Virus record (IMG/VR): IMGVR_UViG_3300042402_002641
Span: 1-64,000 of that record
Direction: 5' to 3' (one strand)
Length of the DNA: 64,000 nucleotides
Positions 26,618-62,993 of the stretch are shown in pieces (positions within the stretch are counted from its first letter, which is position 1; every line of letters starts with the position of its first letter). The position numbers and the translations under genes are program-made. Below the pieces are notes generated by a model, which was given only the letters and a program-made list of their open reading frames with translations, had not been told where the DNA came from and did no database searches.

Positions 26618-26998
26618 GGTTGTTTTGTTTACAAGGTATTTCCTACCCCGGACCTGCTGTTTTTTAGGCAGCTAGAGCAAATCTGCTTTCATTAGCAGCA
26701 CCGCGAACGGTGTTACCAGTGAAGCTCATTGCGCTAAAGTCGAATGTATCTGCGTTTGCATTTACGAGTTTTGCTTGATTTACGGTCATCGCCTACCGTG
26801 TTGCCGTCTCTATTATCTCACCCTGTCGAAACCATGGCAGGCCCATCATAAAAGGACTAGAGCAAATACTACAGTAACAATAATAAAGCCAACTAATGTG
26901 CTATATTCGTTATCCATACTAATCTCCTTATGGTGGACCTGGCGGGAGTCGAACCCGCGTCCAGAATGCCTTCACTTTGAAGGGATTACAACAATTTC
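26618..26998 (-). ncRNA. ssrA: tmRNA, circularly permuted two-piece form: acceptor piece ~26998-26931, coding piece 26844-~26618
   Basis: T-arm GCGGG-TTCGACT-CCCGC and CAGGTCC-A-CCA lie upstream of 5' GGGCCTG..TTCGAC; 7-bp acceptor stem with G3:U70; tag ORF 26759-26664 ends FALAA*. Confidence 0.92.
26846..26917 (-). CDS. 23-aa hydrophobic peptide inside the tmRNA intervening segment
   Basis: TAAGGAG RBS 6 nt upstream; MDNEYSTLVGFIIVTVVFALVLL*. Confidence 0.65.
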   Translation of the reverse strand: MDNEYSTLVGFIIVTVVFALVLL

Positions 26999-27202
26999 TT
27001 AGGCGGGCTGAATATTACTAGCCTGCTGTCCTTTCTGACCCTGAGTTACTTCAAACCTTACACTCTGTCCTTCTTGTAGGCTCTTGAAGCCACTCGAATT
27101 AATCTGTGAAAAGTGAGCAAATAAGTCTGCGCCACCATCGTCCGGAGTAATGAATCCAAAACCTTTGGCGTCGTTAAACCATTTTACTTTTCCTGTTACC
27201 AT
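26999..27202 (-). CDS. cspA: cold shock protein
   Basis: [19 protein letters not shown]. Confidence 0.96.
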
Positions 27203-36305: not shown

Positions 36306-36719
36306 TCATTGCTGCCATATCATGTTGGTATCAAGATGTTCGATTTCTTCAATGGCACTGACCGTTCTGCAGGCATGATTCAACACATGTGTGTCGTCCA
36401 CTATCAGTATGTATGCTGCTTCGCTTTTACCTGGAATCATTAACTTATGTATCTCGCATTTGGTTTTGATAAACCGCTGTGTTAATTTAATAGTATACAG
36501 CATTCCCAAAGCGATTGCAAGATCGTCTAGTCTAAGATCTAGGATCAATCGCCAAGGATCGGGCCATTGTTGGGGTGAGTCGGGATCGAGGTATGCACTT
36601 ACAAACGGAGCATGACTCCAAAGTTCAGCAACATCTTCCAGTGGGTTATCACTGGTTTCTAGTGTGTCTCTAAACTGTTTCCAAGCTGCAATTCGATCTG
36701 TGCCGTATCGGTCAAACAC
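36306..36719 (-). CDS. hypothetical phage protein
   Basis: Overlaps upstream gene stop; WPDPW motif. Confidence 0.7.
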   Translation of the reverse strand: MFDRYGTDRIAAWKQFRDTLETSDNPLEDVAELWSHAPFVSAYLDPDSPQQWPDPWRLILDLRLDDLAIALGMLYTIKLTQRFIKTKCEIHKLMIPGKSEAAYILIVDDTHVLNHACRTVSAIEEIEHLDTNMIWQQ

Positions 36720-38304
36720 CGTAGGCTACATCGAAAGAGATGCTGCCTGTTTGCCCTGTGGCCAGAGGATTCTTGTATGATAACAACACTGTGGAAAGAC
36801 TACTGTCTCCCCCTGGAGGGTTTGTGAGTGTGGTATTAAATTCAAAATTAGTCATAGTAGGTCCTCCTAGAGCTGTGACAAGGTTCGGTGAATATGTATA
36901 ATTATCAGTAAAACCGATATTAGTGACATCATCTACACCTGCGAGGTCATCACCTATGGCCATTTGCAGGGTGCCAAATCTAGTGTGTCCGCCTAGTCGT
37001 AGACAATAATTTATCACTGTAAATTTGTTGAGAGATGAAAACACTGCCAGCGGTCTAAAACTGTCGCTGAGATCAATCAGTGCGTAGTTTCTGTCTACGA
37101 AATTAACATTAGCCGCGTTGAAAACTTCTACAAAACTGCCTTTGGTATCTACCGAAGTCATGCCTGCAGCCTGTTGGCGATTGCTAGTGCAGTCCACAAT
37201 CACATTTCCTATCTGTTCTCCAAAGTAAACCATAACATCATCTGGATTGGCTGCGGTAGCGGTGCCGTTGGCTACGTTTTTAAATTTTGATCTGTTAATT
37301 ACTGTACCTTGACCATTGGTAGATCTAAATGCCTGACGGTCGATCTCTTCGAACACACAATCATAAATCGTCCAATTATTACCTTGAGTAGCTACACCGT
37401 CGATGTATATAGCCGTGTCATTCACAAAAAATCGAGAATTTTCAAATTTAATTTCTGTATCATATACCGCAGTTTGAAGACATTTCACTGCTACGCTTAC
37501 TCCTTCAAACGCACAGTCCCTAAATAAAATATTGTCCGTCTTGGTGCCTGCTAGTGTATTTTCCCAGAACACCGAAGCAGGTTCTGTGGCCAGTGAAGCT
37601 ACTGCTGTGCCTAACACATAGGTTCCTTGAAAGTTTAATTTTGATAACGAGGAATTAGCGACTCCTGACAACACAATCTGTCCTGTAGTTCTCGATATTG
37701 TAAGGTTCGATATGTCTATGTTCTGTGGTCTATTAGTGCTGTTAAATTCTACAAGTTCCAATCCTGTGCTGGTGATGAAACGAATATTATTTGCGCCTAT
37801 GTTCAGAATTACACTGTGTCTTGTTTCTCCCTGTAGTATTATTCCAGAGGGCAGTGCAAGGTCGCTAGTAAACAGATATTCACCATTAGGAATCACTAGA
37901 ACTTTTTTATAATTGGTATTAGCGTTGCGGAACAGCTGGGTGGCTGCTGTTTCAAAGGCTGTGACGCAGTCGGTGGAACCATCACCTATGGCTCCGAAAT
38001 CTCTAACACTGACGTGGGTTTCATCTATTTTGTTCTGTAGAGATCTAGGAATGCTTAGGGTTATTGATGTGTCATCGTTAGCAAATCTATAGCTGGCTGC
38101 AAGATCTAAGATGTTGTCGTGTTCTGTGAGTATTTTTGTGTTGCCTACATAGGGTGCACCTTCTAGTACACTGCCGTTACCTATGAATAATTCTTGGGAA
38201 TCTACGGCCCATGCAAATTCAGCAGAGCTTAATTGTGGTACGCCACTGTTGGAGTTTTTTTGGCCTCTTCTGACCTGGATTTTTGAGATTTGGACCACTG
38301 CCAC
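36712..38304 (-). CDS. virion protein with pectate-lyase-like beta-helix (tail/baseplate-associated)
   Basis: VVQISKIQVRRG N-terminus, SVRDFGAIGDG, beta-helix repeats; late promoter. Confidence 0.75.
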   Translation of the reverse strand: MAVVQISKIQVRRGQKNSNSGVPQLSSAEFAWAVDSQELFIGNGSVLEGAPYVGNTKILTEHDNILDLAASYRFANDDTSITLSIPRSLQNKIDETHVSVRDFGAIGDGSTDCVTAFETAATQLFRNANTNYKKVLVIPNGEYLFTSDLALPSGIILQGETRHSVILNIGANNIRFITSTGLELVEFNSTNRPQNIDISNLTISRTTGQIVLSGVANSSLSKLNFQGTYVLGTAVASLATEPASVFWENTLAGTKTDNILFRDCAFEGVSVAVKCLQTAVYDTEIKFENSRFFVNDTAIYIDGVATQGNNWTIYDCVFEEIDRQAFRSTNGQGTVINRSKFKNVANGTATAANPDDVMVYFGEQIGNVIVDCTSNRQQAAGMTSVDTKGSFVEVFNAANVNFVDRNYALIDLSDSFRPLAVFSSLNKFTVINYCLRLGGHTRFGTLQMAIGDDLAGVDDVTNIGFTDNYTYSPNLVTALGGPTMTNFEFNTTLTNPPGGDSSLSTVLLSYKNPLATGQTGSISFDVAYGV

Positions 38305-38342
38305 GATAGTTCTCCTAGAAACTTCTATTTCTAGTATTTAGC

Positions 38343-39041
38343 TTATCGCAGTGAGTAATACTCTTCCACTTTAGCCAACCAGGCATCCTGCCACTTGTTA
38401 AAGTCTTTGGGTTCTAGTGTAAACTGTTGATATTGGAAGTCCCGCGAACACATGAAAATAACACCTTTACGAATGTCTGTGCCATAGACTTCATTATGTG
38501 CTAATATATAGGCCATTAACTGTAAGTAGTAATCTTCTACCCATTCTGCTTTCTTAGGCTTGTTGGTCTGTTTGTGATCCATGACCGCAGGTTCACCTTC
38601 ATGTACACCTACCAAGTCTGTGGTGCCTGAGAACAGACCCGGAAAATATAGGCTCTGTTCCATGGCCCAAACTTCGTTGACTTTGCTGAGACCATTCTCG
38701 ATGATAACATCGGCCATTTTATTAGCCTGAACATGCACAGGTGCGTTGCCAGGTTGTCTCTGCTCACCAACAATAAACCGTTCTAGGTTGGCATGCATGG
38801 CTGTGCCTACTCCAGCAGCTTCTGTGGTAATCTGCTGTGCTTTGGCATGTCCGATTCTATCTCGCCATTCATTCAAATGTGTCATGTCTTTGGTGGCTGA
38901 CAGAATAGTTGTTACACTTGGGAGGCTTTCGCCGTCGGGTGTTAGATATACTCGTTTGCGTGTAACAGGATCGTTGATCTGTTTGCAGTTTTTATATTGA
39001 TACCGTTCGACGAACGGTGGTGGTGTGTGAGATGTAGTCAT
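38343..39041 (-). CDS. PD-(D/E)XK exonuclease
   Basis: PSVTTIL, GTAMH, GTTDL, DHK, QLMAY. Confidence 0.88.
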   Translation of the reverse strand: MTTSHTPPPFVERYQYKNCKQINDPVTRKRVYLTPDGESLPSVTTILSATKDMTHLNEWRDRIGHAKAQQITTEAAGVGTAMHANLERFIVGEQRQPGNAPVHVQANKMADVIIENGLSKVNEVWAMEQSLYFPGLFSGTTDLVGVHEGEPAVMDHKQTNKPKKAEWVEDYYLQLMAYILAHNEVYGTDIRKGVIFMCSRDFQYQQFTLEPKDFNKWQDAWLAKVEEYYSLR

Positions 39042-39070
39042 ATTCTGTATATATTAACAGAATACGTTGA

Positions 39071-39442
39071 TTATGTCAAACTTGGCGTTAAGTTTTGAGC
39101 AGCCGCACCTGCTGCGATTTTATCCACAGCATCTTGACTGGTCTGTCCTTGACTTACTGGAGTTTCGGTATCCTTGTCGGTGCCTGGTACATTGAGTTCG
39201 ATACCGTCAGCGTTGAAGTTTTTGACCAAGGCCTTTATCACTGGGCTGGAATCATACATGCTTTTAAAAGTTTCGTAGTCTGCACCCATTTCAAATCCGC
39301 TGTCTGTGGCGATCTTTTGCAGAGCAGACCAATTCAGTTTGGCAGCTTGTTTTTTACTGGCTGCACGACCAATAAAGTTTTTAAGGATCATGACGAATTT
39401 GTCAAGTCCTAGGTCGGTATCTACGAATTCAAAAAATCTCAT
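39071..39442 (-). CDS. hypothetical phage protein
   Basis: MRFFEF start; within late operon. Confidence 0.7.
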   Translation of the reverse strand: MRFFEFVDTDLGLDKFVMILKNFIGRAASKKQAAKLNWSALQKIATDSGFEMGADYETFKSMYDSSPVIKALVKNFNADGIELNVPGTDKDTETPVSQGQTSQDAVDKIAAGAAAQNLTPSLT

Positions 39443-39786
39443 CCTAGTTGTGCCAGTTGTTTTTGTAGATCAGATAATTGGGTCTGTGTTTGTTTTATTT
39501 GATCTTGAATCTGTTTTTTCTGATCCTGCCTTTCTTTGGCAGCCATAGCTGCTTGTGCAGGATCCATACCGCCACCAGCAAGTCCGCTGGCAGCTTGACC
39601 AACTGCCTGAGCACCTTTAGCAACTGCTCCGCCAACTGCTCCGCCAACTGCCTTAGCGCCTTTAAGGGCCGCACTTCCCATAGCAGCAGCACCTCGTGCA
39701 ATACCGCCCGCAACTGCGCCTATCGCAGGTAGTATTTCATCTAACTTCTGTTGTTCTTGCTCAGAAGTAATTTCATCAAGTTTCAT
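39439..39786 (-). CDS. Gly/Ala-rich hypothetical (probable internal head protein)
   Basis: MKLDEITSE..LDEILP; C-terminal coiled coil. Confidence 0.65.
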   Translation of the reverse strand: MKLDEITSEQEQQKLDEILPAIGAVAGGIARGAAAMGSAALKGAKAVGGAVGGAVAKGAQAVGQAASGLAGGGMDPAQAAMAAKERQDQKKQIQDQIKQTQTQLSDLQKQLAQLG

Positions 39787-41117
39787 TAGCCTGCTAGTAC
39801 TCTTAGTAAATTGCTGCTACGGTCAATGCTTTCACGCTGTTCGCGTCCTGCGTCACCCATACCAGCTGCTGGTTCTGCGGCAGCAAACTCATCATCACCA
39901 CCTAGTTCTTCACCACCTGCATTCATTGCATCCGGTTCAACTGGTCCCATTTCTTCTTCGCCACCCATACCTGCTGGCTCGCCGCCTAACATTTCTGCAC
40001 CCTGCTCTTCACCGGTGAGCATGCGCACACCTGTGGCTAGAGTTTCGCGTGTGGTCTTGAGATTTTCAAGAGCCTGTTGAATGGCAGGTGCTACTGAACT
40101 GATAAAGGTCTTGGCCTGTTCTTGACTCATCTCATCACGGATTGAATCACCTAATTGCAGTAGTGTGTCATTTTCCATGCCTGATAGTTCTTCAATCCAA
40201 CGGCTGACTCTGTCAACCATTGTTTTTGCTGTTACGATAGCGGAAGCCTGTTGGACTTCGCCTTCTTGTAGTCTTGTCATATCTTCTCCTGTTGTGACTG
40301 ATTCGTCTTTCTTAGCAGGTAAATTTTTGTGTTTGGTGCCTGCAAATTTTTCTAGTTCTTTGGTGCTCATCTTGGCCATTTCCGCAGCGGCACCTTTGCC
40401 TGAAGGTGTGTCACCTTTGCGTTTCGCTGCAAGAGCTATTCCAGCAGCCTGTTGTTGTGCTTTGCTCACTGCTTTTTCAGAAACTTGATCTTCATACTGA
40501 ACGCTTTCGTAGTCTTCGTCCGAACCAAATCCTGCTGATGATAGAGCATAGGCATCGTCTGTTTCGCCACCTTCATCCTCGTCGCCACCTTGGGCCAGCT
40601 CGTTGAACTCATCTTCTAGGCTTTCCATATAACGATCCATGTTGCGGAGTTCACCCCCGTCTTGATCTGCATAGGAACCATACACGTAATCTAATGCACC
40701 TTCTACATCGCCTTGACGTAATAGTTCAACGATCTTGTCCTCATCTAGCATACCGTATCCGCCGATCTCGTTCATGTCTTCGTCGAACTGTTTCATTATT
40801 TTTGCGACTTCTTCTTCAATTGATCCGGATCCTTCTGGTACAGTGGTATCAACGATATGCTCTTGACGATCCATAAGTTCTGCAACAATAGCATCGTGCA
40901 TGAACTGTGCCTTAGTCAGGGTTTCGTTTTCGATGGTTTCATTAAATCCGCTTTCTTGTCGGGCTGTGTGTATTTGGGTACGCAGTTTGTTACGTGCATC
41001 CTCTAGCTTGGGAGTATCAAAACTCTCTAGGTCTAGTTTAGTTCCGAATGTCTTGGCCAAAGATTCGTTGATGCGTTGGGCCGATCTATTGAATCTAAAA
41101 AGGTCTGTGGTTTTCAT
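39786..41117 (-). CDS. acidic prohead core/scaffold-like protein with DUF3008-like insert
   Basis: Very acidic, repeated [IL]xE sites, ends LLRVLAG; AVSKAQQQAAGIALAAKR..ELEKFAGTKHK insert. Confidence 0.55.
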   Translation of the reverse strand: MKTTDLFRFNRSAQRINESLAKTFGTKLDLESFDTPKLEDARNKLRTQIHTARQESGFNETIENETLTKAQFMHDAIVAELMDRQEHIVDTTVPEGSGSIEEEVAKIMKQFDEDMNEIGGYGMLDEDKIVELLRQGDVEGALDYVYGSYADQDGGELRNMDRYMESLEDEFNELAQGGDEDEGGETDDAYALSSAGFGSDEDYESVQYEDQVSEKAVSKAQQQAAGIALAAKRKGDTPSGKGAAAEMAKMSTKELEKFAGTKHKNLPAKKDESVTTGEDMTRLQEGEVQQASAIVTAKTMVDRVSRWIEELSGMENDTLLQLGDSIRDEMSQEQAKTFISSVAPAIQQALENLKTTRETLATGVRMLTGEEQGAEMLGGEPAGMGGEEEMGPVEPDAMNAGGEELGGDDEFAAAEPAAGMGDAGREQRESIDRSSNLLRVLAG

Positions 41118-41151
41118 AGTTTTAAGGGTCCAGATTTTATAGTATATTTAT

Positions 41152-41577
41152 TCAGGATTTGGTCAAAGAGTCTGCTAGATTTTTAGCAGCAACAGTTCGA
41201 TCTCGGCTTTCTGTGTATCGAGCCCACAATATGTCTGCACGGTCATGATCTCCCGAATCTTTGGCCTTTTGATATTGATTGCGCAGCAGTTGGCTATCAG
41301 TGAACCAGCGACCATAGTCTTGGTCTGCAGCATAGATGCGATCTATGATCAACGAGCTTTGTCGTAGGCACATGAGATTTGCTATTTTGATAGCCACTGC
41401 ATTGAGATGTATTTCTCTGTAGATGATCTCTCCATCACGCAGAAGATTTTTAATATGACCCTGGCTCTGTATCAGTATATCACCTACAAGGATGCCTTCC
41501 GTGGTTCGAACTGGTATGGGATTTTGCAGCAGCTCTTTGCGGACTATGTGTTCTAGCCGCTGGCTTATTCTTGTCAT
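41152..41577 (-). CDS. hypothetical protein
   Basis: ORF fits operon. Confidence 0.65.
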   Translation of the reverse strand: MTRISQRLEHIVRKELLQNPIPVRTTEGILVGDILIQSQGHIKNLLRDGEIIYREIHLNAVAIKIANLMCLRQSSLIIDRIYAADQDYGRWFTDSQLLRNQYQKAKDSGDHDRADILWARYTESRDRTVAAKNLADSLTKS

Positions 41578-41600
41578 AAAAAAAGGACCTCTGGTCCTTT
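41578..41600 (-). terminator. terminator hairpin
   Basis: aaaaggacc-tct-ggtcctttt. Confidence 0.7.
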
Positions 41601-41617
41601 ATTTAAGTGCTGTTATT

Positions 41618-41938
41618 TCATGCTCCAAAGAACTTGAATATGGTCTGTAGATTCAGCTGTCCGGTCCAACCTAGTCCAGCCACAAATGCCATGCCTACCA
41701 TACCGTACATCATCATCTTGTTCTTGCTTTGTTCTAGTTCGTTGAGTTTTTTGCCTAGTTCTGCATGCTGTGTGCAGGAGGCGTCGTACATGTGATTCAA
41801 TTTCTCAGTGAGTCCATCGCGGGTTTTATCCAGGCAATCGTGGAGATCTTTGACATCAACTTTTAGTTCATCTAGTTTTTCGTCAAGATTTGCAACCTGC
41901 GTTTCTACTATTCCAACACGTTCTGCTACTGTAGGCAT
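41618..41938 (-). CDS. coiled-coil protein with C-terminal TM
   Basis: Heptad pattern then hydrophobic helix; start uncertain. Confidence 0.65.
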   Translation of the reverse strand: MPTVAERVGIVETQVANLDEKLDELKVDVKDLHDCLDKTRDGLTEKLNHMYDASCTQHAELGKKLNELEQSKNKMMMYGMVGMAFVAGLGWTGQLNLQTIFKFFGA

Positions 41939-42046
41939 TAGGGCCGTCTCCAATGTAATAAGTCAAGTGCTCGCTCCGAGCCATGTGCCTATGATATGAT
42001 TGAATGCCTAATGGTTACTACTGTGCCTTTGGTATATTATTTATCG

Positions 42047-42442
42047 TCACTGACTGATTTTACTACACCAAATGTTGGTGTTATCGCCTCGGCTTCTAAA
42101 CACCGCAGGAGTCAGTTCCACTGTGTTATTTAGTCGGTCAACTATGGGCACACCATCCAGGTCATCGACCAACAGTGCCACAGCATCACCTTGCTTCAGA
42201 AACACGTCTTCACGTTCTGCATCAAACTCCCAGATCCAGTGTGTGGCCTTGCCTGTACCTATGGGCAGTCTGCCTGTGTGCGACTCGGGGTCTCGGATCC
42301 AAGTGACATTAGAGCGCATGCCTATGGCCTGCACAAGGCTGTTGAAATTGGCCTGTTGACCTAGCTTGACTCGATCAGTTTCATCTCGCACCGGATTGGT
42401 TCGAGTGATGTCGACCACTGTGATGATTTGATATCTAGCCAT
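42047..42442 (-). CDS. hypothetical phage protein
   Basis: TVVDIT..QQANFNSLVQAIGMRSN; late promoter. Confidence 0.7.
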   Translation of the reverse strand: MARYQIITVVDITRTNPVRDETDRVKLGQQANFNSLVQAIGMRSNVTWIRDPESHTGRLPIGTGKATHWIWEFDAEREDVFLKQGDAVALLVDDLDGVPIVDRLNNTVELTPAVFRSRGDNTNIWCSKISQ

Positions 42443-42479
42443 AATATGCTAGTATTTACATTATAAATCTCCAGCCAAC

Positions 42480-42502
42480 AAAAAAGGACCTTTCGGTCCT
42501 TT
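42480..42502 (-). terminator. terminator hairpin
   Basis: aaaggacc-tttc-ggtccttt (GAAA loop on minus strand) plus T-run. Confidence 0.75.
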
Positions 42503-42531
42503 AATGCTTCCCATCCCTGAGAATTAACTAA

Positions 42532-42951
42532 TTACAGTGCTGGTGCAAAGATTGCTTCAGTAGTCACTGTGAAAGTGGTACCGTTAGCATCTGCAGCTTC
42601 GGCTGCTGCCTTGATATCAGCAACTGTTAGAGAGCCAGTTCCTTGGCAACGTAGGAATACAACCTGTGTTGTACCTGCTACGAATGCTGCGCCTGCAGCT
42701 GTTCCTACTGCTGCTACTGTGAATGCAGAGTCACCTGAACCTGCTGAACCTTGGCTTCTTGTGATTTCGCTGATAGCTGCGGTTAGCTCAGTGTCCAAAA
42801 TTCCTGCGTCTGCTGAAATTTTAACAATCAGCTCACGACCTGCATCAGATTGGCTGATTCTGTGTTTACGTGCGTTCACACCTAAAACACCACCAGCAAT
42901 TGCTGTACCAGCGTTGTTGAATGTTTCTTCTCTTGAATATACGTCTGCCAT
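42532..42951 (-). CDS. probable virion structural/decoration protein
   Basis: Ala/Thr/Gly-rich; AAGGAG RBS, own late promoter and terminator. Confidence 0.55.
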   Translation of the reverse strand: MADVYSREETFNNAGTAIAGGVLGVNARKHRISQSDAGRELIVKISADAGILDTELTAAISEITRSQGSAGSGDSAFTVAAVGTAAGAAFVAGTTQVVFLRCQGTGSLTVADIKAAAEAADANGTTFTVTTEAIFAPAL

Positions 42952-43051
42952 GATAATTTCTCCTTAATCAATGACCTCGCTCAGAGGCCGGCAATAATAA
43001 AGAATCACCTGATTCTTGTCTAGTATTTAGTCATTTTGGTTAAAACCGTGG

Positions 43052-44149
43052 TTAATCGGCTCTAAACGGAGTCCAACGATCTCTAGGCACTAGTTTTGAA
43101 CCACCTGCCACATAGCCTTCGCCGCCTGGCTTGCCGCCTGTTGTGGCTGTGATTTCACCTTCGGCTGCGTCCAGCTCACGGATCACTTCATCTTTGGCTG
43201 ACATGATTTCTCTTACCAGCTCAAATAGCAGATCCATGACTCCGGGGTGCCGTTCACTGTGTGCTGCGATCTTCTGAGCTTTAGCAGGAGTTTTCCCCAC
43301 AAAGTTCATGAACGCTTCTGTGTTGATGTTGTCTAACTGTTTAGCCTTGCTCTGAGTATTAACGAAAGTGTAGATCTCTGACTGTAGATAGCCCATGCCT
43401 GCCACAGGAGCTAGAAGGCTGTTGATCTTTGGTTGGTTCTTGGTCAAAGCTTCTATCTTGGCTAGATTAGCTGCACCCACAGCTGGTCTATGGCTGACTG
43501 CTGTGAGTCCAAACACCTGCAGTGCAGGAGTGTTATTAAACAGTTCTGCATCATCGAAGTCTTCACCACTCTTGTCTCCGAAATAACTGAATACCTTGTG
43601 AGCTGCCACAGCTACCTTAGCATCTGCCAGTGCTCTACCTGTGACACTGTTCACCATCACTGAATAAGTGGTTTGATTGGGAGTAAACGAAATACGGCCA
43701 TCTGCACCTGTGTAGGACTTGCCTGGATGGAACAGGATGTCTCCGTAGACGTAGCCACGAAAATCTGCAGGAGTAGCTGCTTCAAATATGGGCCACAGTG
43801 CGGCCATATCGCCGGCAAACTTGGGACGCCATTCTTCATCCTTGCCACGACTCATGATAAACTGTTTGAGTTCTTCTGGACTAGATGATTTGCCTTCTTC
43901 ACGACCCCAATTGTTTTTACCTACCAATCTAAATTCACCATTGTCTTCTCGACCCCAATACACTGTGGGATTACCATCCCATTTGATAGTGATGCTGGTT
44001 TCAGGTTTGGCTAGATCTTTCAGTATCTGTATGGCCTTGACTGCGCCATCGGATTCAGTGAACACTAGATCCTCTAGGTGGTTGAATTCTCTGCCCACCT
44101 TTTTAGGAGCAGGTGCTTCATCTTCTAATAAAAGTTCCCAGAATCTCAT
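43052..44149 (-). CDS. ATP-dependent RNA-ligase-like nucleotidyltransferase (DUF6267-like)
   Basis: HLEDL; motif I KWDG, motif III GDILF, motif IV EGYV, motif V KLV. Confidence 0.65.
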   Translation of the reverse strand: MRFWELLLEDEAPAPKKVGREFNHLEDLVFTESDGAVKAIQILKDLAKPETSITIKWDGNPTVYWGREDNGEFRLVGKNNWGREEGKSSSPEELKQFIMSRGKDEEWRPKFAGDMAALWPIFEAATPADFRGYVYGDILFHPGKSYTGADGRISFTPNQTTYSVMVNSVTGRALADAKVAVAAHKVFSYFGDKSGEDFDDAELFNNTPALQVFGLTAVSHRPAVGAANLAKIEALTKNQPKINSLLAPVAGMGYLQSEIYTFVNTQSKAKQLDNINTEAFMNFVGKTPAKAQKIAAHSERHPGVMDLLFELVREIMSAKDEVIRELDAAEGEITATTGGKPGGEGYVAGGSKLVPRDRWTPFRAD

Positions 44150-44955
44150 CGTACTATGTCAATCATTCTGCGCATCCAACCAATTGTTCCTGGTTGATAG
44201 CTTTCTACCGCGGCTTTGGCAGGTAGCTCAATGCCCTGTTTGCCCAAGGTTTCTCTTGCACCCGAGACCAGTTCATCGTAGTTGGGTAGTTTGATTATGT
44301 AGTCTAGAATGTTGTCTACACTGCGTATATCTTTAACTGTGGCTGTCTGTCCCAGCAACTGTTTGGCTATGGTATTCCAATCGTCTCCGCCTGGCAGAGG
44401 TTCGTTGGTGTCTGCGTGTAAAAGACCAAACTTAGGTGAGTATTTTAGATCTCTGGCTCGGGCGATAGAACTCAACACGATATGGCGATGCTCACCCTTA
44501 TACTGCCCGCGACCGCCTATCAACGATCCCTGTTGAAACTTGGGATTTACTGAAAACATAAAGTCTGACTGCACGAAGCCGTTGACTTGATCCCCTGCGA
44601 TAGGAGTTTTTAAATGCACACTGTCTCCGCTGAGTTTGACATTTTCTTTGCCGAACTGTGCTATCAATTTAGCTGCGAATTCTTTCTTGTCTACTTCATT
44701 GGCATCCACTGACAGATCCAGATCACCCGAACTGTTCAGCTCGAATGTACCGTCTGGATCTTCTTTGCGTCCTGTGGTTCCCAGCCATTTTACAGGTTTT
44801 TTGTCATCTGGATCTAGTTCTTTGGTGAAGTCTAATCCAGTGATCTTTTCTATATAGTCTATGGTAGCAGGCACATCTTTGGTAGCGATACGCTGGGTCA
44901 GTGATTGTTTGTCGGCATCTTTGAATACGTTGCCACCTTCAAATAGTTTATTCAT
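44146..44955 (-). CDS. Pol-beta superfamily nucleotidyltransferase
   Basis: LGTTG..SGDLDL (GS/DxD) and VQSDFM third Asp. Confidence 0.7.
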   Translation of the reverse strand: MNKLFEGGNVFKDADKQSLTQRIATKDVPATIDYIEKITGLDFTKELDPDDKKPVKWLGTTGRKEDPDGTFELNSSGDLDLSVDANEVDKKEFAAKLIAQFGKENVKLSGDSVHLKTPIAGDQVNGFVQSDFMFSVNPKFQQGSLIGGRGQYKGEHRHIVLSSIARARDLKYSPKFGLLHADTNEPLPGGDDWNTIAKQLLGQTATVKDIRSVDNILDYIIKLPNYDELVSGARETLGKQGIELPAKAAVESYQPGTIGWMRRMIDIVR

Positions 44956-45223
44956 CGTTGATAATTCTCTGAGATTTACGAGATTCTGTTATTTTACGGA
45001 TACCGCGTGTGAATTTAGCAGGATCTTGCCCGCGGATAGCATTTACAAATCTGCGCTCAAGCTCATCTGCCTGTTCTGGCGTATACTGCTTGTGCAGGCT
45101 TTCCAGTAGATTTATGGCTGAATTGATGATATTAGTGGCTCTGCTTTCAAACAGCGCATCCTTGTTGCGTACTTCGGCTATTTCATTCAGCTCTTGCAGT
45201 ATTGAACGAGTTCTAAGTTTCAT
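44948..45223 (-). CDS. hypothetical phage protein
   Basis: TRSILQEL..KFTRGI; first gene of the late operon. Confidence 0.7.
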   Translation of the reverse strand: MKLRTRSILQELNEIAEVRNKDALFESRATNIINSAINLLESLHKQYTPEQADELERRFVNAIRGQDPAKFTRGIRKITESRKSQRIINDE

Positions 45224-45364
45224 GAGTGGTTCCGTTGATATTATATTTAACCTAAACCCAAGATTGTTAAAATGATATTATTCAGCAGAAATTGTGCGGT
45301 TGCACATAAGTAGACTAAATACTCAGTAGAAATACTGAGTCTACACTAACACACAGGGAACACA

Positions 45365-45689: not shown

Positions 45690-46265
45690 ATGAACTTGGT
45701 TTATATACACGGTGCCAATGCCACCAGCGAAAGTTTTAATTATATCCGTAGCAAATTAGGCAACGGTATCGATATCAATTACGACAGTCGCAATGGGTTT
45801 GAAAACAATCTAGCAGACATGCAGTCAACACTACAGGGTCATAAGGATCTGGTGTTTGTTGCGCATAGTCTAGGTGGTATCTATAGCCTGCATTTGGCCA
45901 ATAGTATGCCTGAGTCTGTTAAGGGTGCTGTTACTCTAAGCACACCTTATGGTGGCGCAGAAGTTGCTGACTATGCTCAATACTTTTTGCCCTTTAGCCG
46001 TCTAATGCGCGATATTGGTCCTAGTTCGTGGGTAATGAAGCAAGCTAGCCGCATTAAGATACAGCATCCGTGGACTAACATTGTAACAGTCAAAGGACAA
46101 AGTCCGTTTATGCATGAGCCTAATGACGGTGTGGTGACTATTGCCAGTCAAAAGCATCATGAGAATATGGAATTAGTGGAGGTTGAATACAACCACTATG
46201 AAGTAGTGCTCAGTGACGAAGTGGTTGGACTTATCAAAGAACGAATAAAAAAGTTCAGAAAATAA
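45690..46265 (+). CDS. alpha/beta hydrolase (lipase/esterase)
   Basis: IHG, AHSLGG, STPYGG, NDGVV, NH. Confidence 0.88.
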   Translation: MNLVYIHGANATSESFNYIRSKLGNGIDINYDSRNGFENNLADMQSTLQGHKDLVFVAHSLGGIYSLHLANSMPESVKGAVTLSTPYGGAEVADYAQYFLPFSRLMRDIGPSSWVMKQASRIKIQHPWTNIVTVKGQSPFMHEPNDGVVTIASQKHHENMELVEVEYNHYEVVLSDEVVGLIKERIKKFRK

Positions 46266-46355
46266 GTTGCTTTTCAGTCACAGAGCATATATAATAAACT
46301 AACAGCGAAAAAGAAGTAGTTGTTAGACACAGACATTACACACAGGAGATACAAA

Positions 46356-46628
46356 ATGTCAGAAATTTTTACAGCACCAAAACTACCAGAAGTTAAATTC
46401 AACAAGAACGGCTACGAAATCCGTACAGACATCTTGGGCATGGCCAAGAGCCTAGTACAAGACGACTTCCAAGCCAAGTTCCAAGGTTGGGAAATGACTG
46501 CTACTCGCGATGAGAAGACTGGTCAAATCGTTAGTACAGTTGCAATGCCAACTTTTCCAGGTCTAGATAAAGTACTAGAAACCGCCGAAAAAATGTATAG
46601 CTTTGTAAACGCCGGCGTGAAGAAATAA
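46356..46628 (+). CDS. conserved phage hypothetical protein
   Basis: AGGAG RBS; YEIRTDIL..AEKMYSFV. Confidence 0.75.
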   Translation: MSEIFTAPKLPEVKFNKNGYEIRTDILGMAKSLVQDDFQAKFQGWEMTATRDEKTGQIVSTVAMPTFPGLDKVLETAEKMYSFVNAGVKK

Positions 46629-46660
46629 TTACGCTCGTAGAGCAATATATAGTGGTAAAA

Positions 46661-46687
46661 GAAAAGCAGCCTCCGGGCTGCTTTTTC
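46661..46687. terminator. bidirectional terminator
   Basis: aaaagcagcc-tccg-ggctgctttt between convergent genes. Confidence 0.85.
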
Positions 46688-46688
46688 T

Positions 46689-47390
46689 TTATCTAACTGT
46701 GGCTAACTTAAAGAATCGCAGTATTGAAATATACATCCAACCTATATCAAACTCCCACCAACGTTGGCTGAATTTCGCCGATGCTCCGTCGTCGTGGTGA
46801 TTGGCATGCAATTCCTCACCGCCGATCCAGATGGCCCACGGAATTAAATTGCGGCTGGTATCCTCAGCAGATCTGTTGCGGTAACCCCACCAATGACATA
46901 GACCGTTAATGACTCCTGCGGCAAAAAATGGTATCCAAAGCATCTGTACACCCCATACCAGCAGTCCCCACGGGCCAAAAAGCCAAAGGTCTATGACCAA
47001 CAATATGAGAATCCCCAAGCGACTGTGCGGGGTATACAGATTTTCTTCTATCCAATCGTTAGGGGTGCCTTGACCCAGCTGTTCTACCATCAGTTTGTTC
47101 TTGCTGGCAGTGTTATATAACAATGCGCCTCCGAACAGCACACGCCAAATGCCATAGACTTTGGGACTGTGTGGGTCTGCGGCTTTGTCAGCAGCTTGAT
47201 GATGTTTGCGATGTATTGCCACCCACTGTTTAGTAACCATTCCTGTGGTCATCCACAACCAAAATCTCATAAAATGATTGATCACAGGATGAAACGACAC
47301 GGCTCTGTGTGTTTGGCTTCTATGTAAGTAAAGAGTCACACAGGCTATAGTGATTTGTACCATCACCAAGGTATAGATTATTATGTTCAT
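46689..47390 (-). CDS. membrane fatty acid (delta-9-type) desaturase
   Basis: His boxes HRSQTH, HRKHH, HANHH. Confidence 0.93.
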   Translation of the reverse strand: MNIIIYTLVMVQITIACVTLYLHRSQTHRAVSFHPVINHFMRFWLWMTTGMVTKQWVAIHRKHHQAADKAADPHSPKVYGIWRVLFGGALLYNTASKNKLMVEQLGQGTPNDWIEENLYTPHSRLGILILLVIDLWLFGPWGLLVWGVQMLWIPFFAAGVINGLCHWWGYRNRSAEDTSRNLIPWAIWIGGEELHANHHDDGASAKFSQRWWEFDIGWMYISILRFFKLATVR

Positions 47391-47405
47391 ATTTTACTTA
47401 TCTGC

Positions 47406-47434
47406 TTGACAGCATATCAAAATAATGCTATAAT
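47406..47434 (+). promoter_or_regulatory. sigma70 promoter, leaderless geometry
   Basis: TTGACA-N17-TATAAT, 5 nt before ATG at 47440. Confidence 0.85.
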
Positions 47435-47439
47435 ATAGC

Positions 47440-48021
47440 ATGAAAAACAAACTTATACTCACAGACGCTGACGGTGTTCTACTAGATTGGGAATGGGCAT
47501 TCTCAGTTTGGATGCAAGAACGTGGTTATACACTCACAGCAGATAATAAGAAAAGCTATTATCTGCATCATCACTACAATGAGCTAGAAGAAAAAGATGC
47601 CAAAAAAGTTGTTAAGACTTTTAACGAATCGGCAGCAATTGGATTCTTACCAGCACTGCGGGATAGTGCTCACTATGTCAAACGCCTACATGAAGAACAT
47701 GGCTGTATGTTCCGTGTTATCACAAGCCTAAGTCTAGACAAGAATGCACAGAAACTGCGTGAAATGAACCTACGCAAGATATTTGGCAATGCCATCGAAA
47801 CGGTTATCTGTTTAGATACAGGCGCAAACAAAGATTCAGCATTAGAACCATATCGTGATAGCGGCCTGTGGTGGATTGAAGATAAACCAGCTAATGCTGA
47901 TGTTGGTTACACTTTAGGACTTAAATCAATTCTCATTGAACACGGACATAACATGCATCACAAATGTTCTTACCCTGTAGTCAAAAACTGGCGTGAACTC
48001 TACGATATTATTGTAGACTAA
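47440..48021 (+). CDS. HAD-family 5'-nucleotidase-like phosphatase
   Basis: DADGVLLDW, ITS, K, WIEDK. Confidence 0.85.
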   Translation: MKNKLILTDADGVLLDWEWAFSVWMQERGYTLTADNKKSYYLHHHYNELEEKDAKKVVKTFNESAAIGFLPALRDSAHYVKRLHEEHGCMFRVITSLSLDKNAQKLREMNLRKIFGNAIETVICLDTGANKDSALEPYRDSGLWWIEDKPANADVGYTLGLKSILIEHGHNMHHKCSYPVVKNWRELYDIIVD

Positions 48022-61673: not shown

Positions 61674-62993
61674 ATGCGTACACAACCAGAAACAATCATC
61701 CAGCGTCTTGAAGCAGATAACTCACGACTGGCCAAAGAGCAGATCCTAGCAGAAGCAATGTCAGAAGGTCTGGATGAGTTTTTTGAAGGAGTTAAGATGG
61801 GCTTAGACAAGCTCTACACATTTGGCATCAAACAGGTTCCCGTCAGTGAACAAGATGGGCAAGGACTTTCTTGGACCAACTTTGTGGAATTGGCCGAAGC
61901 TCTGTATCGCAGAGAACTCACTGGCCATGCCGCACGTGATGCAGTCAAACTGGCCATGGATGTGGCCACTAAGTCGCAGTGGAATGATTGGTATCGTAGG
62001 ATTCTGATCAAAGACATGCGAGCTGGATTCGGTGAAAAGTCAGTGAACTCTGTGGCCAAGAAAGCCAAGAAGCCCGAATACGCTGTGCCTGTGTTTGAAG
62101 TCATGTTGGCACATGATGGTGCTAATCATGAAGGCAAGATCACAGGAAAAAAATTGGTAGAACCCAAGCTAGACGGAGTTCGTGTGGTCACTGTGGTTGA
62201 CTTTGAAAGCCGCACAGTTGTGATGTATACCCGCAACGGCAAAGAACTTGTGAACTTTCCGCATATTGTTAAGGCATTTGAAGACAACCTAGATAACTTT
62301 GCTCGTAGCTATGTTTTCGACGGTGAAGTGGTATCTACATCGTTCCAGGCCTTGATGAAAGAAGTACATCGCAAAGAAAATGCGCAGGCACAGGATGCCC
62401 GACTGATGCTGTTTGATGTGATCCCTTTGTCGGAGTTCAAACTGGGTGAGAGTGCTATGGGGCAACGGCGGCGCAGTGCATTCTTGCGTGAAAACTTTTC
62501 CAAGATATTTGCAGACTCAGGCTGCATCGACATCATCGCACAACGTGAATTTGATCTAGATGTGTTCACTGATGAGATCGAGTTCCGTGACTACAACAAG
62601 CAGATGGTCACAGAGGGCTTTGAGGGTATCATGATCAAAGATCCCAACGGCAAATGGGAAGGCAAACGCAGCGTGGCCTGGCTCAAACAAAAGCCCTTTA
62701 TTGAAGTCAGCCTTGAAATCACAGCAGTAGAAGAAGGCACAGGCCGGAATGAGGGCAGGCTAGGTGCTGTAATCTGTGCAGGGCGAGATGATGGCAAAGA
62801 CATTCGAGTTAATGTGGGTTCGGGTTTCACAGATAGCGATCGAAAGGAATACTGGGAAGCTCGAGACAGCCTTCCGGGTCAGGTCATAGAAGTACGTGCA
62901 GATGCTGTGACACAGAATCAAGACGGCACCTACAGCCTACGCTTTCCACGCTTTATGCGATTCCGTGGATTCAAGACCGGTGAAAAGATCTAA
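61674..62993 (+). CDS. ATP-dependent DNA ligase
   Basis: KLDGVR, FDGE, FD, EGIMIK, KQK, GSGF, LRFPRF. Confidence 0.95.
   Translation: MRTQPETIIQRLEADNSRLAKEQILAEAMSEGLDEFFEGVKMGLDKLYTFGIKQVPVSEQDGQGLSWTNFVELAEALYRRELTGHAARDAVKLAMDVATKSQWNDWYRRILIKDMRAGFGEKSVNSVAKKAKKPEYAVPVFEVMLAHDGANHEGKITGKKLVEPKLDGVRVVTVVDFESRTVVMYTRNGKELVNFPHIVKAFEDNLDNFARSYVFDGEVVSTSFQALMKEVHRKENAQAQDARLMLFDVIPLSEFKLGESAMGQRRRSAFLRENFSKIFADSGCIDIIAQREFDLDVFTDEIEFRDYNKQMVTEGFEGIMIKDPNGKWEGKRSVAWLKQKPFIEVSLEITAVEEGTGRNEGRLGAVICAGRDDGKDIRVNVGSGFTDSDRKEYWEARDSLPGQVIEVRADAVTQNQDGTYSLRFPRFMRFRGFKTGEKI

What the first reader, a model, noticed from the sequence alone, without database searches (positions are those of the whole stretch)
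43052..45223. Coupled Pol-beta nucleotidyltransferase and RNA-ligase-like enzyme, both with packaging signals
Seen: three overlapping late genes (small helical protein, GS/DxD NTase, KxDG ligase-fold protein). Established: phages repair tRNAs cut by host anticodon nucleases, and Pol-beta NTases also include CCA-adding enzymes and cyclic-nucleotide synthases. Inference: an injected RNA end-extension and sealing anti-defence module, or a signal-nucleotide-making pair.
Basis: partly seen in the sequence, partly recalled or inferred. Interest (0 to 1): 0.68.

Follow-up and report, generated by a model that had tools for sequence, protein, structure and literature searches.

The report
Phage polymerase-X-like plus ligase-like repair pair
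Two overlapping genes of a large aquatic phage encode a small DNA-polymerase-beta-like enzyme and a previously unrecognised ligase-like enzyme (DUF6267); in many related phages they are fused into one protein, so they most likely extend and seal broken nucleic acid together.

Summary
The three overlapping minus-strand genes exist as described: 91, 269 and 365 aa, overlapping by 8 and 4 nt.

The 269-aa protein is a Pol-beta-superfamily nucleotidyltransferase. Its predicted fold matches family X DNA polymerases over palm plus thumb. Its three carboxylates are invariant.

The 365-aa protein belongs to Pfam DUF6267. Its confident model matches only RNA and DNA ligases, and KxDG plus candidate motifs III, IV and V are invariant. 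It lacks an OB domain and carries a helical insert.

The coupling is real. About 35 of 149 distant DUF6267 representatives are single-chain fusions with the 269-aa domain, in both orders. The two genes are adjacent or fused in 17 of 21 dereplicated phage lineages. The family appears to be restricted to phages.

The 91-aa gene is a backbone gene that follows the replicative helicase in related jumbo phages, some of which lack the pair.

A T4-like N-terminal capsid-targeting leader is conserved on DUF6267 proteins. The supposed signal on the 269-aa protein is part of its fold.

Best reading: a fill-and-seal polynucleotide repair module, possibly carried in the virion. I lean towards nicked or gapped DNA as substrate. 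tRNA repair stays open and signal-nucleotide synthesis is unlikely. No biochemistry exists for any member.

The parts
44948..45223 (-). p91, a 91-aa protein. It is a conserved backbone gene rather than a specific partner of the enzyme pair.
   Evidence: It matches phrog_11854 at E 7e-17. An HMM of the neighbour cluster c2 hits it at E 1e-35. A homologue lies upstream of DUF6267 in 67 of 82 loci. Homologues also lie directly after the gp41-like helicase in phage 121Q, where neither the NT nor the DUF6267 HMM matched within the 10-kb stretch examined, and in Paride/PA5oct. The label 'virion structural protein' comes from database annotation. The PA5oct copy, EST35_0225, is not flagged as detected by mass spectrometry.
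44146..44955 (-). p269, a Pol-beta-superfamily nucleotidyltransferase with a family-X-polymerase-like palm and thumb.
   Evidence: AF2 model: pLDDT 79. Foldseek against PDB: top hits are T. thermophilus PolX, Pol beta and Pol lambda, E about 1e-4. VIA-align: the top 10 are all family X polymerases, Z 6.5-8.4 with 149-179 residues aligned (Pol beta 8.4; ASFV PolX 7.1 with 158 of 176). Other NTases align over only ~88 residues. There is no Pfam, PHROG, NCBIfam or PDB sequence match.
44716..44781 (-). p269 catalytic segment: G59-T-T-G62 ... S76-G-D78-L-D80.
   Evidence: These residues are invariant in alignment A5. SSGDLDL resembles the SSGDMDV that I recall from Pol beta; that comparison rests on memory and was not tested. 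This clade has a 9-residue insert between the glycine motif and the DxD.
44563..44565 (-). p269 third carboxylate, D131 (Q-x-D-F-M).
   Evidence: Q129, D131 and M133 are invariant in A5.
43052..44149 (-). p365, a DUF6267 protein: a divergent covalent (ligase/capping-type) nucleotidyltransferase with a helical insert at about residues 215-330 and no OB domain.
   Evidence: Pfam PF19782: 60.9 bits against a cut-off of 27. AF2 model: pLDDT 94, pTM 0.89. VIA-align: the top 17 rows are all RNA or DNA ligases, Z 5.0-6.8 with 156-190 residues aligned across residues 15-365. Foldseek against PDB gives only ligases at the top, but weakly, E about 1e-2. BFVD: family members come first, then mostly RNA ligases.
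43973..43984 (-). p365 motif I, K56-W-D-G59, with the putative nucleotidylated lysine.
   Evidence: K56, D58 and G59 are invariant in 66 diverse sequences. G66 is invariant and R67 nearly so.
43082..43120 (-). p365 candidate motifs IV and V: G-G-E344-G345-Y-V ... K352-L-V-P-R356.
   Evidence: E344, G345 and K352 are invariant; V354 and R356 nearly so. Both lie on short beta strands of the model, residues 346-348 and 351-353. The motif assignment is inferred from order and conservation, not from a residue-level superposition.
44123..44149 (-). p365 N-terminal leader MRFWELLLE, which resembles a T4 capsid-targeting sequence.
   Evidence: The strict pattern M[RK]xx[ED][FLIVM] occurs in 35 of 88 representatives whose DUF6267 domain is N-terminal, and looser forms occur in more. 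It occurs in 5.6% of the other ORFs in related loci. It is absent from S-PM2d138 and from the Vibrio 2.275.O copy. In the model it forms a separate low-confidence helix (residues 3-10) followed by a linker. Cleavage and targeting are not shown.
42483..42502 (-). Terminator-like hairpin that may end the transcription unit after the 139-aa ORF at 42532-42951.
   Evidence: The stem has 8 pairs and is followed by a T run. This is a consensus match only.

Best explanation
p269 and p365 form a two-enzyme 'fill-and-seal' module for broken polynucleotides. p269 is a minimal enzyme like a family X polymerase. It uses the D78/D80/D131 two-metal site to add one or a few nucleotides to a 3'-OH. p365 is a new clade (DUF6267) of the lysine-nucleotidylating ligase superfamily. 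It would charge K56 with AMP, transfer the AMP to a 5'-phosphate and seal the nick.

I judge the substrate to be more likely nicked or gapped duplex DNA of the phage itself. That would mean repair of the incoming or replicating genome, as done by ASFV PolX plus ligase or by the PgV PolX-ligase fusion. Broken tRNA is the less likely substrate.

The ligase-like protein carries a T4-type N-terminal targeting leader, so the pair may be loaded into the capsid and delivered with the DNA.

What is shown: the gene structure, the folds, the invariant catalytic residues, the adjacency and fusion, the restriction to phages, and the conservation of the leader.

What is inferred: catalysis, the order of the reaction steps, the substrate and the packaging.
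For: Folds and motifs: searches show p269 is PolX-like over palm and thumb. Searches show p365 matches only ligases. Searches show the catalytic residues are invariant.

Coupling:
- About 35 of 149 representatives that share at most 50% identity are NT+DUF6267 fusions. 32 have NT first and 3 have DUF6267 first.
- NT lies immediately upstream or is fused in most of 160 fetched loci.
- This holds in 17 of 21 clusters dereplicated at 70% identity.
- The gene order is the same in 342-352 kb relatives.

Lean towards DNA:
- Non-PolX NTases match only the ~88-residue core.
- In marine T4-like phages the module follows primase and DnaB-like helicase. In S-PM2 it follows gp43, UvsX, gp41 and MazG.
- In the window and in PA5oct-like phages it lies in a syntenic block ending in a PD-(D/E)XK exonuclease and RNR.
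- A PolX-ligase fusion has been shown biochemically to fill and seal base-excision-repair gaps (PMC5537341).

Packaging:
- The leader is conserved.
- T4 CTS rules are described in PMC9026906.
- The PA5oct NT homologue EST35_0231 and its neighbours are annotated as 'structural protein, ESI-MS/MS'.
Against: - No member of either family has been assayed.
- Structural Z-scores for p365 are middling (at most 6.8). No sequence profile links either protein to any solved structure.
- p365 has no OB domain, and its nearest structural neighbours are RNA ligases (Rnl5, REL1, Rnl2), tied within 1 Z unit with DNA ligases. That architecture is more typical of RNA ligases.
- The window already encodes a canonical ATP-dependent DNA ligase at 61674-62993.
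- One relative has a P-loop kinase and a HAD_SAK_2 phosphatase about 3-4 kb downstream, which hints at RNA repair.
- Four of 21 lineages have DUF6267 without a detectable NT partner.
- The synteny with replication genes is shared ancestry, not independent evidence.
- The PA5oct mass spectrometry also detected RNR subunits, so detection does not prove packaging (PMC7318152).
- The complex prediction gave no verdict.
Confidence: 0.45

Rival explanations
1. RNA repair. p269 restores nucleotides lost from the 3' end of a tRNA cut by a host anticodon nuclease, as RlaP does. p365 acts as an RNA ligase that reseals the tRNA. The pair would be delivered or made early as a counter-defence.
For: - p365 has an NTase domain plus a helical domain and no OB fold, which is the general architecture of RNA ligases. 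Its best structural matches are NgrRnl, TbREL1 and T4 Rnl2, and BFVD non-family hits are mostly RNA ligases.
- RlaP, a Pol-beta NTase linked to RNA ligases, adds 1-2 NMPs to damaged RNA before ligation (PMC12776372; PMC7824862).
- Contig L005 has DUF6267, a 282-aa gene and an NMNAT-like gene, followed by an AAA_33/Zeta-type kinase and a HAD_SAK_2 phosphatase.
- Cyanomyophages also lack rnlA and pseT (PMC1079782).
- The window has its own DNA ligase, which leaves an RNA role free.
Against: - p269 does not match RlaP (PF10127) or any Pfam NTase at E<=1. Structurally it aligns with PolX over palm and thumb, which terminal RNA NTases do not.
- No Pnkp, RtcB, Rnl1/2 or tRNA genes were found near it in the window. 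The window contains no tRNA genes at all.
- The neighbours conserved across lineages are DNA replication and recombination genes.
- The kinase/HAD context was seen in one contig only.
Confidence: 0.25
2. The pair does not join polynucleotides. It makes or transfers a nucleotide-containing small molecule: a signal, a cofactor such as NAD+ or a related dinucleotide, or an adenylylated metabolite or protein. The ligase-like protein would act as an adenylyl carrier.
For: - In many relatives DUF6267 is fused or adjacent to a third nucleotidyltransferase of the HIGH/NMNAT-PPAT type. This makes a three-NTase assembly that suggests nucleotide-cofactor chemistry.
- The window has a separate kinase plus NMNAT-like gene at 25678-26538.
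- Pol-beta NTases include cyclic-nucleotide synthases.
Against: - CD-NTases and OAS-like enzymes match p269 only over the common core, at lower Z than PolX.
- No effector, receptor or degrading enzyme is linked.
- An NMNAT-like partner is equally well explained as a supplier of NAD+ to a NAD+-using ligase.
- The retained motifs I, III, IV and V are those used for nucleic-acid 5'-phosphate adenylylation.
Confidence: 0.12
3. DUF6267 is mainly the replicative, Okazaki-fragment-sealing ligase of these phages, and p269 is an accessory gap filler. It is not packaged, and the leader is simply an N-terminal helix of the enzyme.
For: - DUF6267 sits in the replisome gene block.
- Cyanomyophages have no gp30 or rnh homologue (PMC2984593; PMC1079782).
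- The P0327 fusion query (residues ~289-649, its DUF6267 part) matches 147 cyanophage records.
- The S-PM2 and Vibrio 2.275.O copies lack the leader.
- An RNaseH_like gene precedes DUF6267 in L005.
Against: - The window phage also has a gp30-like ATP-dependent ligase.
- The leader is optional across the family and sits on a flexible linker, which is how an add-on signal behaves.
- The PA5oct block is detected in virions.
Confidence: 0.13

Closest known systems
PgVPolX of Phaeocystis globosa virus 16T (PolX core fused to a NAD+-dependent DNA ligase; PMC5537341)
   Same: A family-X-type polymerase and a ligase are joined in one viral polypeptide. They were shown to fill a one-nucleotide gap and seal it. 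Here the same two kinds of domain are adjacent and, in relatives, fused.
   Different: The PgV ligase domain is a recognisable NAD+-dependent LigA-type ligase, and its PolX has dRP-lyase activity. Here the ligase-like domain is DUF6267, which has no sequence similarity to any ligase. The polymerase-like domain lacks the 8-kDa lyase and HhH subdomains. The host viruses are phages, not NCLDVs. No activity has been measured.
ASFV Pol X (174 aa) working with the ASFV DNA ligase
   Same: It is a minimal palm-plus-thumb PolX. 158 of its 176 residues align to p269 at Z 7.1. It is paired with a virus-encoded ligase for repair of the viral genome.
   Different: The ASFV ligase is a canonical ATP-dependent ligase with an OB domain. 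p269 has a 55-residue helical C-terminal extension and a different N-terminal strand (E-G-G-N-V-F-K).
RlaP (PF10127) plus RNA ligase repair systems
   Same: A Pol-beta NTase is genetically linked to a ligase. The proposed order is extension of the 3' end followed by sealing.
   Different: p269 gives no Pfam match to RlaP. Its fold match is to PolX. The partner ligases of RlaP are the Rnl and RtcB families, not DUF6267.
Rnl2/Rnl5-type nick-sealing RNA ligases (T4 Rnl2, TbREL1, NgrRnl/DraRnl)
   Same: These are the best structural neighbours of p365, Z 5.9-6.8. They have an adenylyltransferase domain without an OB fold, joined to an accessory domain.
   Different: There is no sequence similarity. 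The accessory helical domain of p365 is inserted between candidate motifs IIIa and IV rather than appended. An invariant H-x-E-D motif lies upstream of motif I.
T4 internal proteins and Alt (CTS-targeted, gp21-processed, injected proteins)
   Same: They carry a short N-terminal leader with hydrophobic or aromatic residues at positions 4 and 7 and a Glu at the end. The cargoes behind the shared leader are diverse. They are delivered with the DNA (PMC9026906, PMC3012670).
   Different: Targeting and cleavage are untested here. The cargo would be a repair enzyme rather than a restriction inhibitor or an ADP-ribosyltransferase. The prohead protease of this phage was not identified in the window.

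Membership tests
Pfam DUF6267 (PF19782) | A match to the family HMM above the gathering score. | tested here: met
   p365 scores 60.9 bits against a cut-off of 27, E 1.9e-16, in two stretches. Full-length matches are seen in relatives. 523 representatives have E<=1e-3.
Covalent nucleotidyltransferase superfamily (DNA/RNA ligases, capping enzymes) | Motif I KxDG with an invariant lysine. | tested here: met
   K56-W-D58-G59; K, D and G are invariant in 66 sequences.
Covalent nucleotidyltransferase superfamily (DNA/RNA ligases, capping enzymes) | Motifs III, IIIa, IV and V in order on beta strands of the nucleotide-binding domain. | tested here: inconclusive
   Conserved candidates are G132..D137 (III), P157-N158..Y162 (IIIa), E344-G345 (IV) and K352 (V). 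All lie on predicted strands. No residue-level superposition was available.
Covalent nucleotidyltransferase superfamily (DNA/RNA ligases, capping enzymes) | The adenylyltransferase fold. | tested here: met
   The 17 best of 48,161 chains are all ligases, Z 5.0-6.8 with 156-190 residues aligned. The Z-scores are moderate, so this is support rather than proof.
Covalent nucleotidyltransferase superfamily (DNA/RNA ligases, capping enzymes) | Formation of a lysyl-NMP intermediate. | not testable with these tools
   This needs a label-transfer assay with alpha-32P ATP, NAD+ or GTP.
ATP-dependent DNA ligase (gp30 / Chlorella virus type) | A C-terminal OB domain with motif VI. | tested here: not met
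   The model ends 9 residues after candidate motif V. The only extra domain is helical, residues ~215-330. There is no Pfam DNA_ligase hit.
RNA ligase families Rnl1/Rnl2/Rnl3/Rnl5 | Sequence membership, by Pfam, NCBIfam or PDB profile. | tested here: not met
   No hit at E<=1 in Pfam, none in NCBIfam, and none in PDB with a single sequence or a profile.
Pol-beta nucleotidyltransferase superfamily | hG[GS] ... DxD ... a third carboxylate, on the alpha-beta-alpha-beta-alpha-beta core. | tested here: met
   G59-T-T-G62, D78-x-D80 and D131 are invariant. The core aligns to TUTases, CD-NTases and MenT at Z 4-6.
Family X DNA polymerase | Palm plus thumb (nucleotide-selection) subdomain. | tested here: met
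   The top 10 VIA rows are all PolX, with 149-179 residues aligned at Z 6.5-8.4. Foldseek gives E 1e-4 and TM 0.35-0.43. The TM-scores are moderate.
Family X DNA polymerase | The 8-kDa dRP-lyase and HhH DNA-binding subdomains, plus sequence membership. | tested here: not met
   p269 is 269 aa and the match begins at the palm. There is no Pfam DNA_pol_B_palm or thumb hit and no PDB profile hit. The comparable known case is the minimal ASFV PolX.
RlaP (PF10127) | A match to the family HMM. | tested here: not met
   No Pfam family matches p269 at E<=1.
CD-NTase / cGAS-like signal synthases | The CD-NTase fold beyond the core, and a linked effector. | tested here: not met
   Only ~88 core residues align, Z 4.4-5.2. 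No effector-like neighbour appears in 82 loci.
T4-type capsid-targeting sequence cargo | An N-terminal leader of ~10 residues, hydrophobic at positions 4 and 7, ending in Glu, removed by the prohead protease. | tested here: inconclusive
   The pattern is present in p365 (W4, L7, E9) and enriched in the family: 35 of 88 against a 5.6% background. Cleavage and packaging are not testable here. The PA5oct mass spectrometry is indirect.

The most novel reading that the evidence does not exclude
DUF6267 is the long-sought 'missing' DNA ligase of T4-like marine cyanophages and related aquatic myophages, which have no gp30 homologue. In jumbo relatives such as this one, DUF6267 and its PolX-like partner are loaded into the capsid through a T4-type targeting leader and injected with the genome. 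That would be a phage counterpart of the virion-borne DNA repair kits I recall from giant eukaryotic viruses. Its role would be to mend sunlight or nuclease damage in the incoming DNA before any phage gene is expressed.
Probability: 0.2. Interest if true: 0.85.

Novelty: new variant of a known kind. Interest (0 to 1): 0.7.

Why it matters
DUF6267 is one of the widespread unknown genes of aquatic phages. It has hundreds of 50%-identity clusters. A fusion-protein query matched 147 cyanophage records through its DUF6267 part. It is found on 340-350 kb jumbo genomes and essentially never in cellular genomes.

Recognising it as a divergent lysine-nucleotidyltransferase that is habitually fused to a PolX-like enzyme turns two 'hypothetical proteins' into a testable repair pathway.

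If it seals DNA, it would answer a question left open since the first cyanomyophage genomes: how these phages join Okazaki fragments without gp30. It would also add a ligase architecture with a helical insert and no OB domain.

If it seals RNA, it would be a new RNA ligase family with its own tailing enzyme.

If it is packaged, it would be, to my knowledge, the first nucleic-acid repair enzyme delivered from a phage head. A compact natural polymerase-ligase fusion may also be useful as a reagent.

Tried and rejected
- No close phage relatives. Megablast and tblastn of the locus against 50,697 phage records found nothing. The exception is p269, at 29% identity to Atu_ph07 and Phosso.
- No sequence link to solved structures. 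Searches of PDB with single sequences and with family profiles gave only chance-level hits.
- hhalign of the DUF6267 profile against the window's own DNA ligase gave probability 0.5%, which is uninformative.
- Complex prediction on p365 plus p269 gave no verdict (runs 0.59, 0.00, 0.00). It is evidence neither for nor against binding.
- The search for related loci with the 66-sequence alignment failed because no stretch was conserved enough. With P0246 alone it returned one locus. Two sub-alignments then worked.
- The T4 late promoter TATAAATA is not enriched in the window: 2 copies against 2.96 expected. Sigma-70-like sites are at shuffle level. The timing of expression therefore remains unknown.
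- Cluster c1, a ~265-aa gene downstream of DUF6267 in 73 of 82 loci, is unrelated to NT, CT or DUF6267 by hhalign. It has no Pfam match and is absent from the window.
- 'p91 is a virion structural protein' is rejected as established. The label traces to database annotations of 121Q-like phages and to PHROGs. The PA5oct copy is not among the proteins detected by mass spectrometry.
- Literature searches for DUF6267 and PF19782 returned nothing.
- No supplementary tables of the PA5oct paper were available for per-gene expression timing.
Full report
**The observation**

Three ORFs lie head to tail on the minus strand:
- 44948-45223 (91 aa, 'p91')
- 44146-44955 (269 aa, 'p269')
- 43052-44149 (365 aa, 'p365')

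They overlap by 8 nt and 4 nt. A terminator-like hairpin follows the next small ORF at 42483-42502.

The window is a large phage genome fragment:
- It carries RNR subunits, an exonuclease, a tail-spike-like protein and an ATP-dependent DNA ligase, among others.
- It has no close cultured relative.
- It is 100% identical over this locus to a 280-kb IMG/VR contig.
- It is 81% identical to proteins on 342-352 kb metagenomic contigs that have the same gene order.

**p269**

No Pfam, PHROG, NCBIfam or PDB sequence match exists.

An AlphaFold model (pLDDT 79) matches family X DNA polymerases first in two independent searches.
- Foldseek gives T. thermophilus PolX, Pol beta and Pol lambda at E about 1e-4.
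- In the all-against-representatives VIA search the ten best chains are all family X enzymes: Pol beta Z 8.4 with 166 residues aligned, Pol lambda, TdT, Pol mu, and ASFV Pol X at Z 7.1 with 158 of 176 residues.
- TUTases, CD-NTases, MenT and alarmone synthetases align only over the ~88-residue common core, at Z 4-6.

Thirty-three family members share 29-79% identity with p269. Among them G59, G62, S76, D78, D80, Q129, D131 and M133 are invariant. The segment S-S-G-D-L-D-L resembles the Pol beta S-S-G-D-M-D-V segment; that last comparison is from memory.

p269 is therefore an apparently active Pol-beta-superfamily transferase with the palm-plus-thumb layout of a minimal PolX. It lacks the 8-kDa and HhH subdomains.

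**p365**

It is a member of Pfam DUF6267 (60.9 bits). I found no publication on this family.

A confident model (pLDDT 94, pTM 0.89) gives only weak Foldseek hits, but the top of the list is all ligases. In the VIA search the 17 best of 48,161 chains are all covalent nucleotidyltransferases:
- NgrRnl 6.8
- TbREL1 6.3
- a minimal bacterial DNA ligase 6.0
- T4 Rnl2 5.9
- Trl1 5.7
- T4 DNA ligase 5.6
- T7 ligase 5.4

The alignments span residues 15-365.

In 66 sequences with 28% mean column identity the invariant residues are H24, D27, K56, D58, G59, G66, K319, E344, G345 and K352. K56-W-D-G is motif I. G132...D137, E344-G-Y-V and K352-L-V are positioned, on predicted strands, as motifs III, IV and V. 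A helical module (about residues 215-330) is inserted before motif IV, and there is no OB domain.

I conclude that DUF6267 is a deeply divergent clade of the ligase/capping-enzyme superfamily. The Z-scores are moderate and the motif III-V assignments are inferred, so this is well supported but not proven.

**Coupling**

This is the strongest result.
- phmmer of p269 against the 149 best DUF6267 representatives (each standing for a 50%-identity cluster) shows that about 35 are single polypeptides carrying both domains.
- Thirty-two have the NTase first and three have it last. They occur within proteins of 544-1259 aa.
- In 160 fetched viral loci the NTase gene is immediately upstream of DUF6267, or fused to it, in most cases.
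- After dereplication at 70% identity, 15 of 21 lineages have it adjacent, 2 have it fused and 4 lack it.

A scan of one genome for each of 185,579 prokaryotic species found only six matches. All are on MAG contigs, including a 335-kb contig that is probably a mis-binned phage. The family is in effect phage-specific.

**A third recurrent partner**

Many relatives add a HIGH-motif adenylyltransferase domain. Pfam calls it CTP_transf_like. Its best NCBIfam matches, all below threshold, are NMN/NaMN adenylyltransferases and PPAT.

This domain is either fused to DUF6267, as in S-PM2d138, or encoded next to it.

The window has no such domain at this locus. It does encode a P-loop kinase plus NMNAT-like protein at 25678-26538.

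One reading is that this partner supplies NAD+ to a NAD+-using ligase. That is speculation.

**p91 and the neighbourhood**

p91 homologues precede the pair in 67 of 82 diverse loci. They also sit directly after the gp41-like helicase in 121Q, where neither the NT nor the DUF6267 HMM matched in the 10-kb stretch examined, and in PA5oct-like phages. p91 is thus a backbone gene rather than a dedicated third subunit.

The whole stretch 36.7-45.2 kb is syntenic with those phages and with marine T4-like phages. The shared order is:

primase - helicase - p91 - [NTase - DUF6267] - c3 - c7 - c6 - c22 - PD-(D/E)XK exonuclease - ... - RNR

.

In S-PM2 the DUF6267-adenylyltransferase fusion follows gp43, UvsX, gp41 and MazG.

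**Packaging**

For p269: the L-F-E is the start of the near-invariant E-G-G-N-V-F-K strand. That strand is also present when the domain is internal to fusions, so it is not an add-on signal.

For p365:
- The first nine residues (MRFWELLLE) form a separate helix on a flexible linker.
- They belong to a leader conserved across very distant DUF6267 proteins (MRAFEFLVE, MKFMDLVLE, MRFRDLITE, MRLTELLVE and others).
- The strict pattern occurs in 35 of 88 representatives with an N-terminal DUF6267 domain, against 5.6% of the other ORFs in the same loci.
- It is missing from the S-PM2 and Vibrio 2.275.O copies.
- The pattern matches published rules for the T4 capsid-targeting sequence. The first ten residues suffice; positions 4 and 7 direct targeting; processing occurs at a Glu (PMC9026906; PMC3012670).

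Two further observations bear on this:
- Within the window, [LI]xE in the first 20 residues occurs in 6 of 10 ORFs between 39.4 and 45.2 kb, against 16 of 80 overall.
- In PA5oct the NTase homologue EST35_0231 and most of its neighbours are annotated 'structural protein, ESI-MS/MS'. A divergent DUF6267 homologue, EST35_0228, lies three genes upstream but is not so annotated. The same mass spectrometry also detected RNR subunits, and the authors list 'virion-unrelated enzymes' among their 93 products.

Packaging is therefore plausible but unproven.

**DNA or RNA?**

For DNA:
- The PolX-specific fold of p269.
- The replication/recombination neighbourhood. This is shared ancestry, so it is weak evidence.
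- The biochemical precedent of the PgV PolX-ligase fusion (PMC5537341).
- The documented absence of gp30 and rnh homologues from cyanomyophages (PMC2984593, PMC1079782), nearly all of which seem to carry DUF6267. The P0327 fusion query matched 147 cyanophage records through its DUF6267 half. Cyanophage names are absent from the ten commonest organism names among gp30-like ligase matches.

For RNA:
- The architecture without an OB domain.
- The slightly better matches to Rnl2/Rnl5-type ligases.
- The RlaP precedent (PMC12776372).
- One contig with kinase and HAD_SAK_2 neighbours.
- The presence of a canonical DNA ligase in this window.

Rnl5-type enzymes seal duplex nicks that have a 3'-ribonucleotide. 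A PolX-like enzyme that inserts ribonucleotides would reconcile the two views.

My estimates:

| Reading | Probability |
|---|---|
| Fill-and-seal on duplex DNA, possibly delivered from the capsid | 0.45 |
| RNA repair | 0.25 |
| Purely replicative, non-packaged ligase | 0.13 |
| Small-molecule nucleotide chemistry | 0.12 |

**Novelty**

Extension-plus-sealing pairs are known (LigD, PgVPolX, RlaP plus Rnl). The components here are new variants:
- an unrecognised ligase clade with an inserted helical domain;
- a minimal PolX-like partner;
- a frequent NMNAT-like third domain;
- a capsid-targeting-like leader.

No biochemical data exist for any member.

Noticed in passing
window 26664-27050 (-): The phage encodes a tmRNA. 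Rfam beta_tmRNA scores 135.7 bits (gathering score 84) and tmRNA_permuted scores 143.7 bits. ARAGORN calls a permuted tmRNA with the tag peptide ANADTFDFSAMSFTGNTVRGAANESRFALAA. The betaproteobacterial type may hint at the host.
   Followed up: partly
window 25678-26538 (-): This 286-aa protein has an N-terminal P-loop kinase, and its residues ~176-247 weakly match archaeal-type NMN adenylyltransferase (E 5e-5, below the cut-off). It may be a NadR-like NAD+ salvage enzyme. It lies next to the tmRNA gene.
   Followed up: partly
window 61674-62993 (+): This is a canonical ATP-dependent DNA ligase (phrog_114, E 4e-88; 30-36% identity to the ligases of SPO1 and KVP40). The phage therefore has a conventional ligase in addition to DUF6267.
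   Followed up: partly
window 36712-45223 (-): This block is syntenic with the PA5oct-like phages PA5oct and Paride, with the Rak2-like phage 121Q, and with marine T4-like phages. The shared genes run from p91 through c3, c7, c6, c22 and the exonuclease towards RNR. In PA5oct most homologues in this block were detected in virion preparations.
   Followed up: partly
window 39071-41117 (-): Several neighbouring small proteins start with leaders like that of p365: MRFFEFVDTD, MKLDEITSE and MKTTDLFRF. The very acidic 443-aa protein (39786-41117) is homologous to PA5oct EST35_0237, which is annotated as a structural protein. This may be a cluster of capsid-internal proteins.
   Followed up: partly
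window 45690-48021: Auxiliary genes lie beside the locus: an alpha/beta hydrolase (45690-46265), a DesA-family fatty acid desaturase (46689-47390; NCBIfam 400.2 bits, at the cut-off of 400) and a HAD/NT5C-like nucleotidase (47440-48021).
   Followed up: no
window 45293-45340 (-): Two hairpins lie in the divergent intergenic region upstream of p91. One of them is ACTCAGTATTTCTACTGAGT. Their function is unknown.
   Followed up: no
L176 (PBPT01000016.1, 335,231 bp): This contig is binned as a 'Candidatus Neomarinimicrobiota' MAG. It carries a DUF6267 gene and has the size of the related jumbo phage genomes. It is probably a mis-binned phage genome.
   Followed up: no
L005 1402-7620: One metagenomic contig has, in order with several unannotated ORFs in between: an RNaseH_like gene, DUF6267, a 282-aa gene, an NMNAT-like gene, then an AAA_33/Zeta-type kinase and a HAD_SAK_2 phosphatase. 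This is the only context with a look of end-healing enzymes.
   Followed up: partly
L026 9284-10081 and 72 other loci (cluster c1): A ~265-aa protein with no Pfam match follows DUF6267 in 73 of 82 marine loci. It is absent from the window. Its function is unknown, and it may be another partner.
   Followed up: partly
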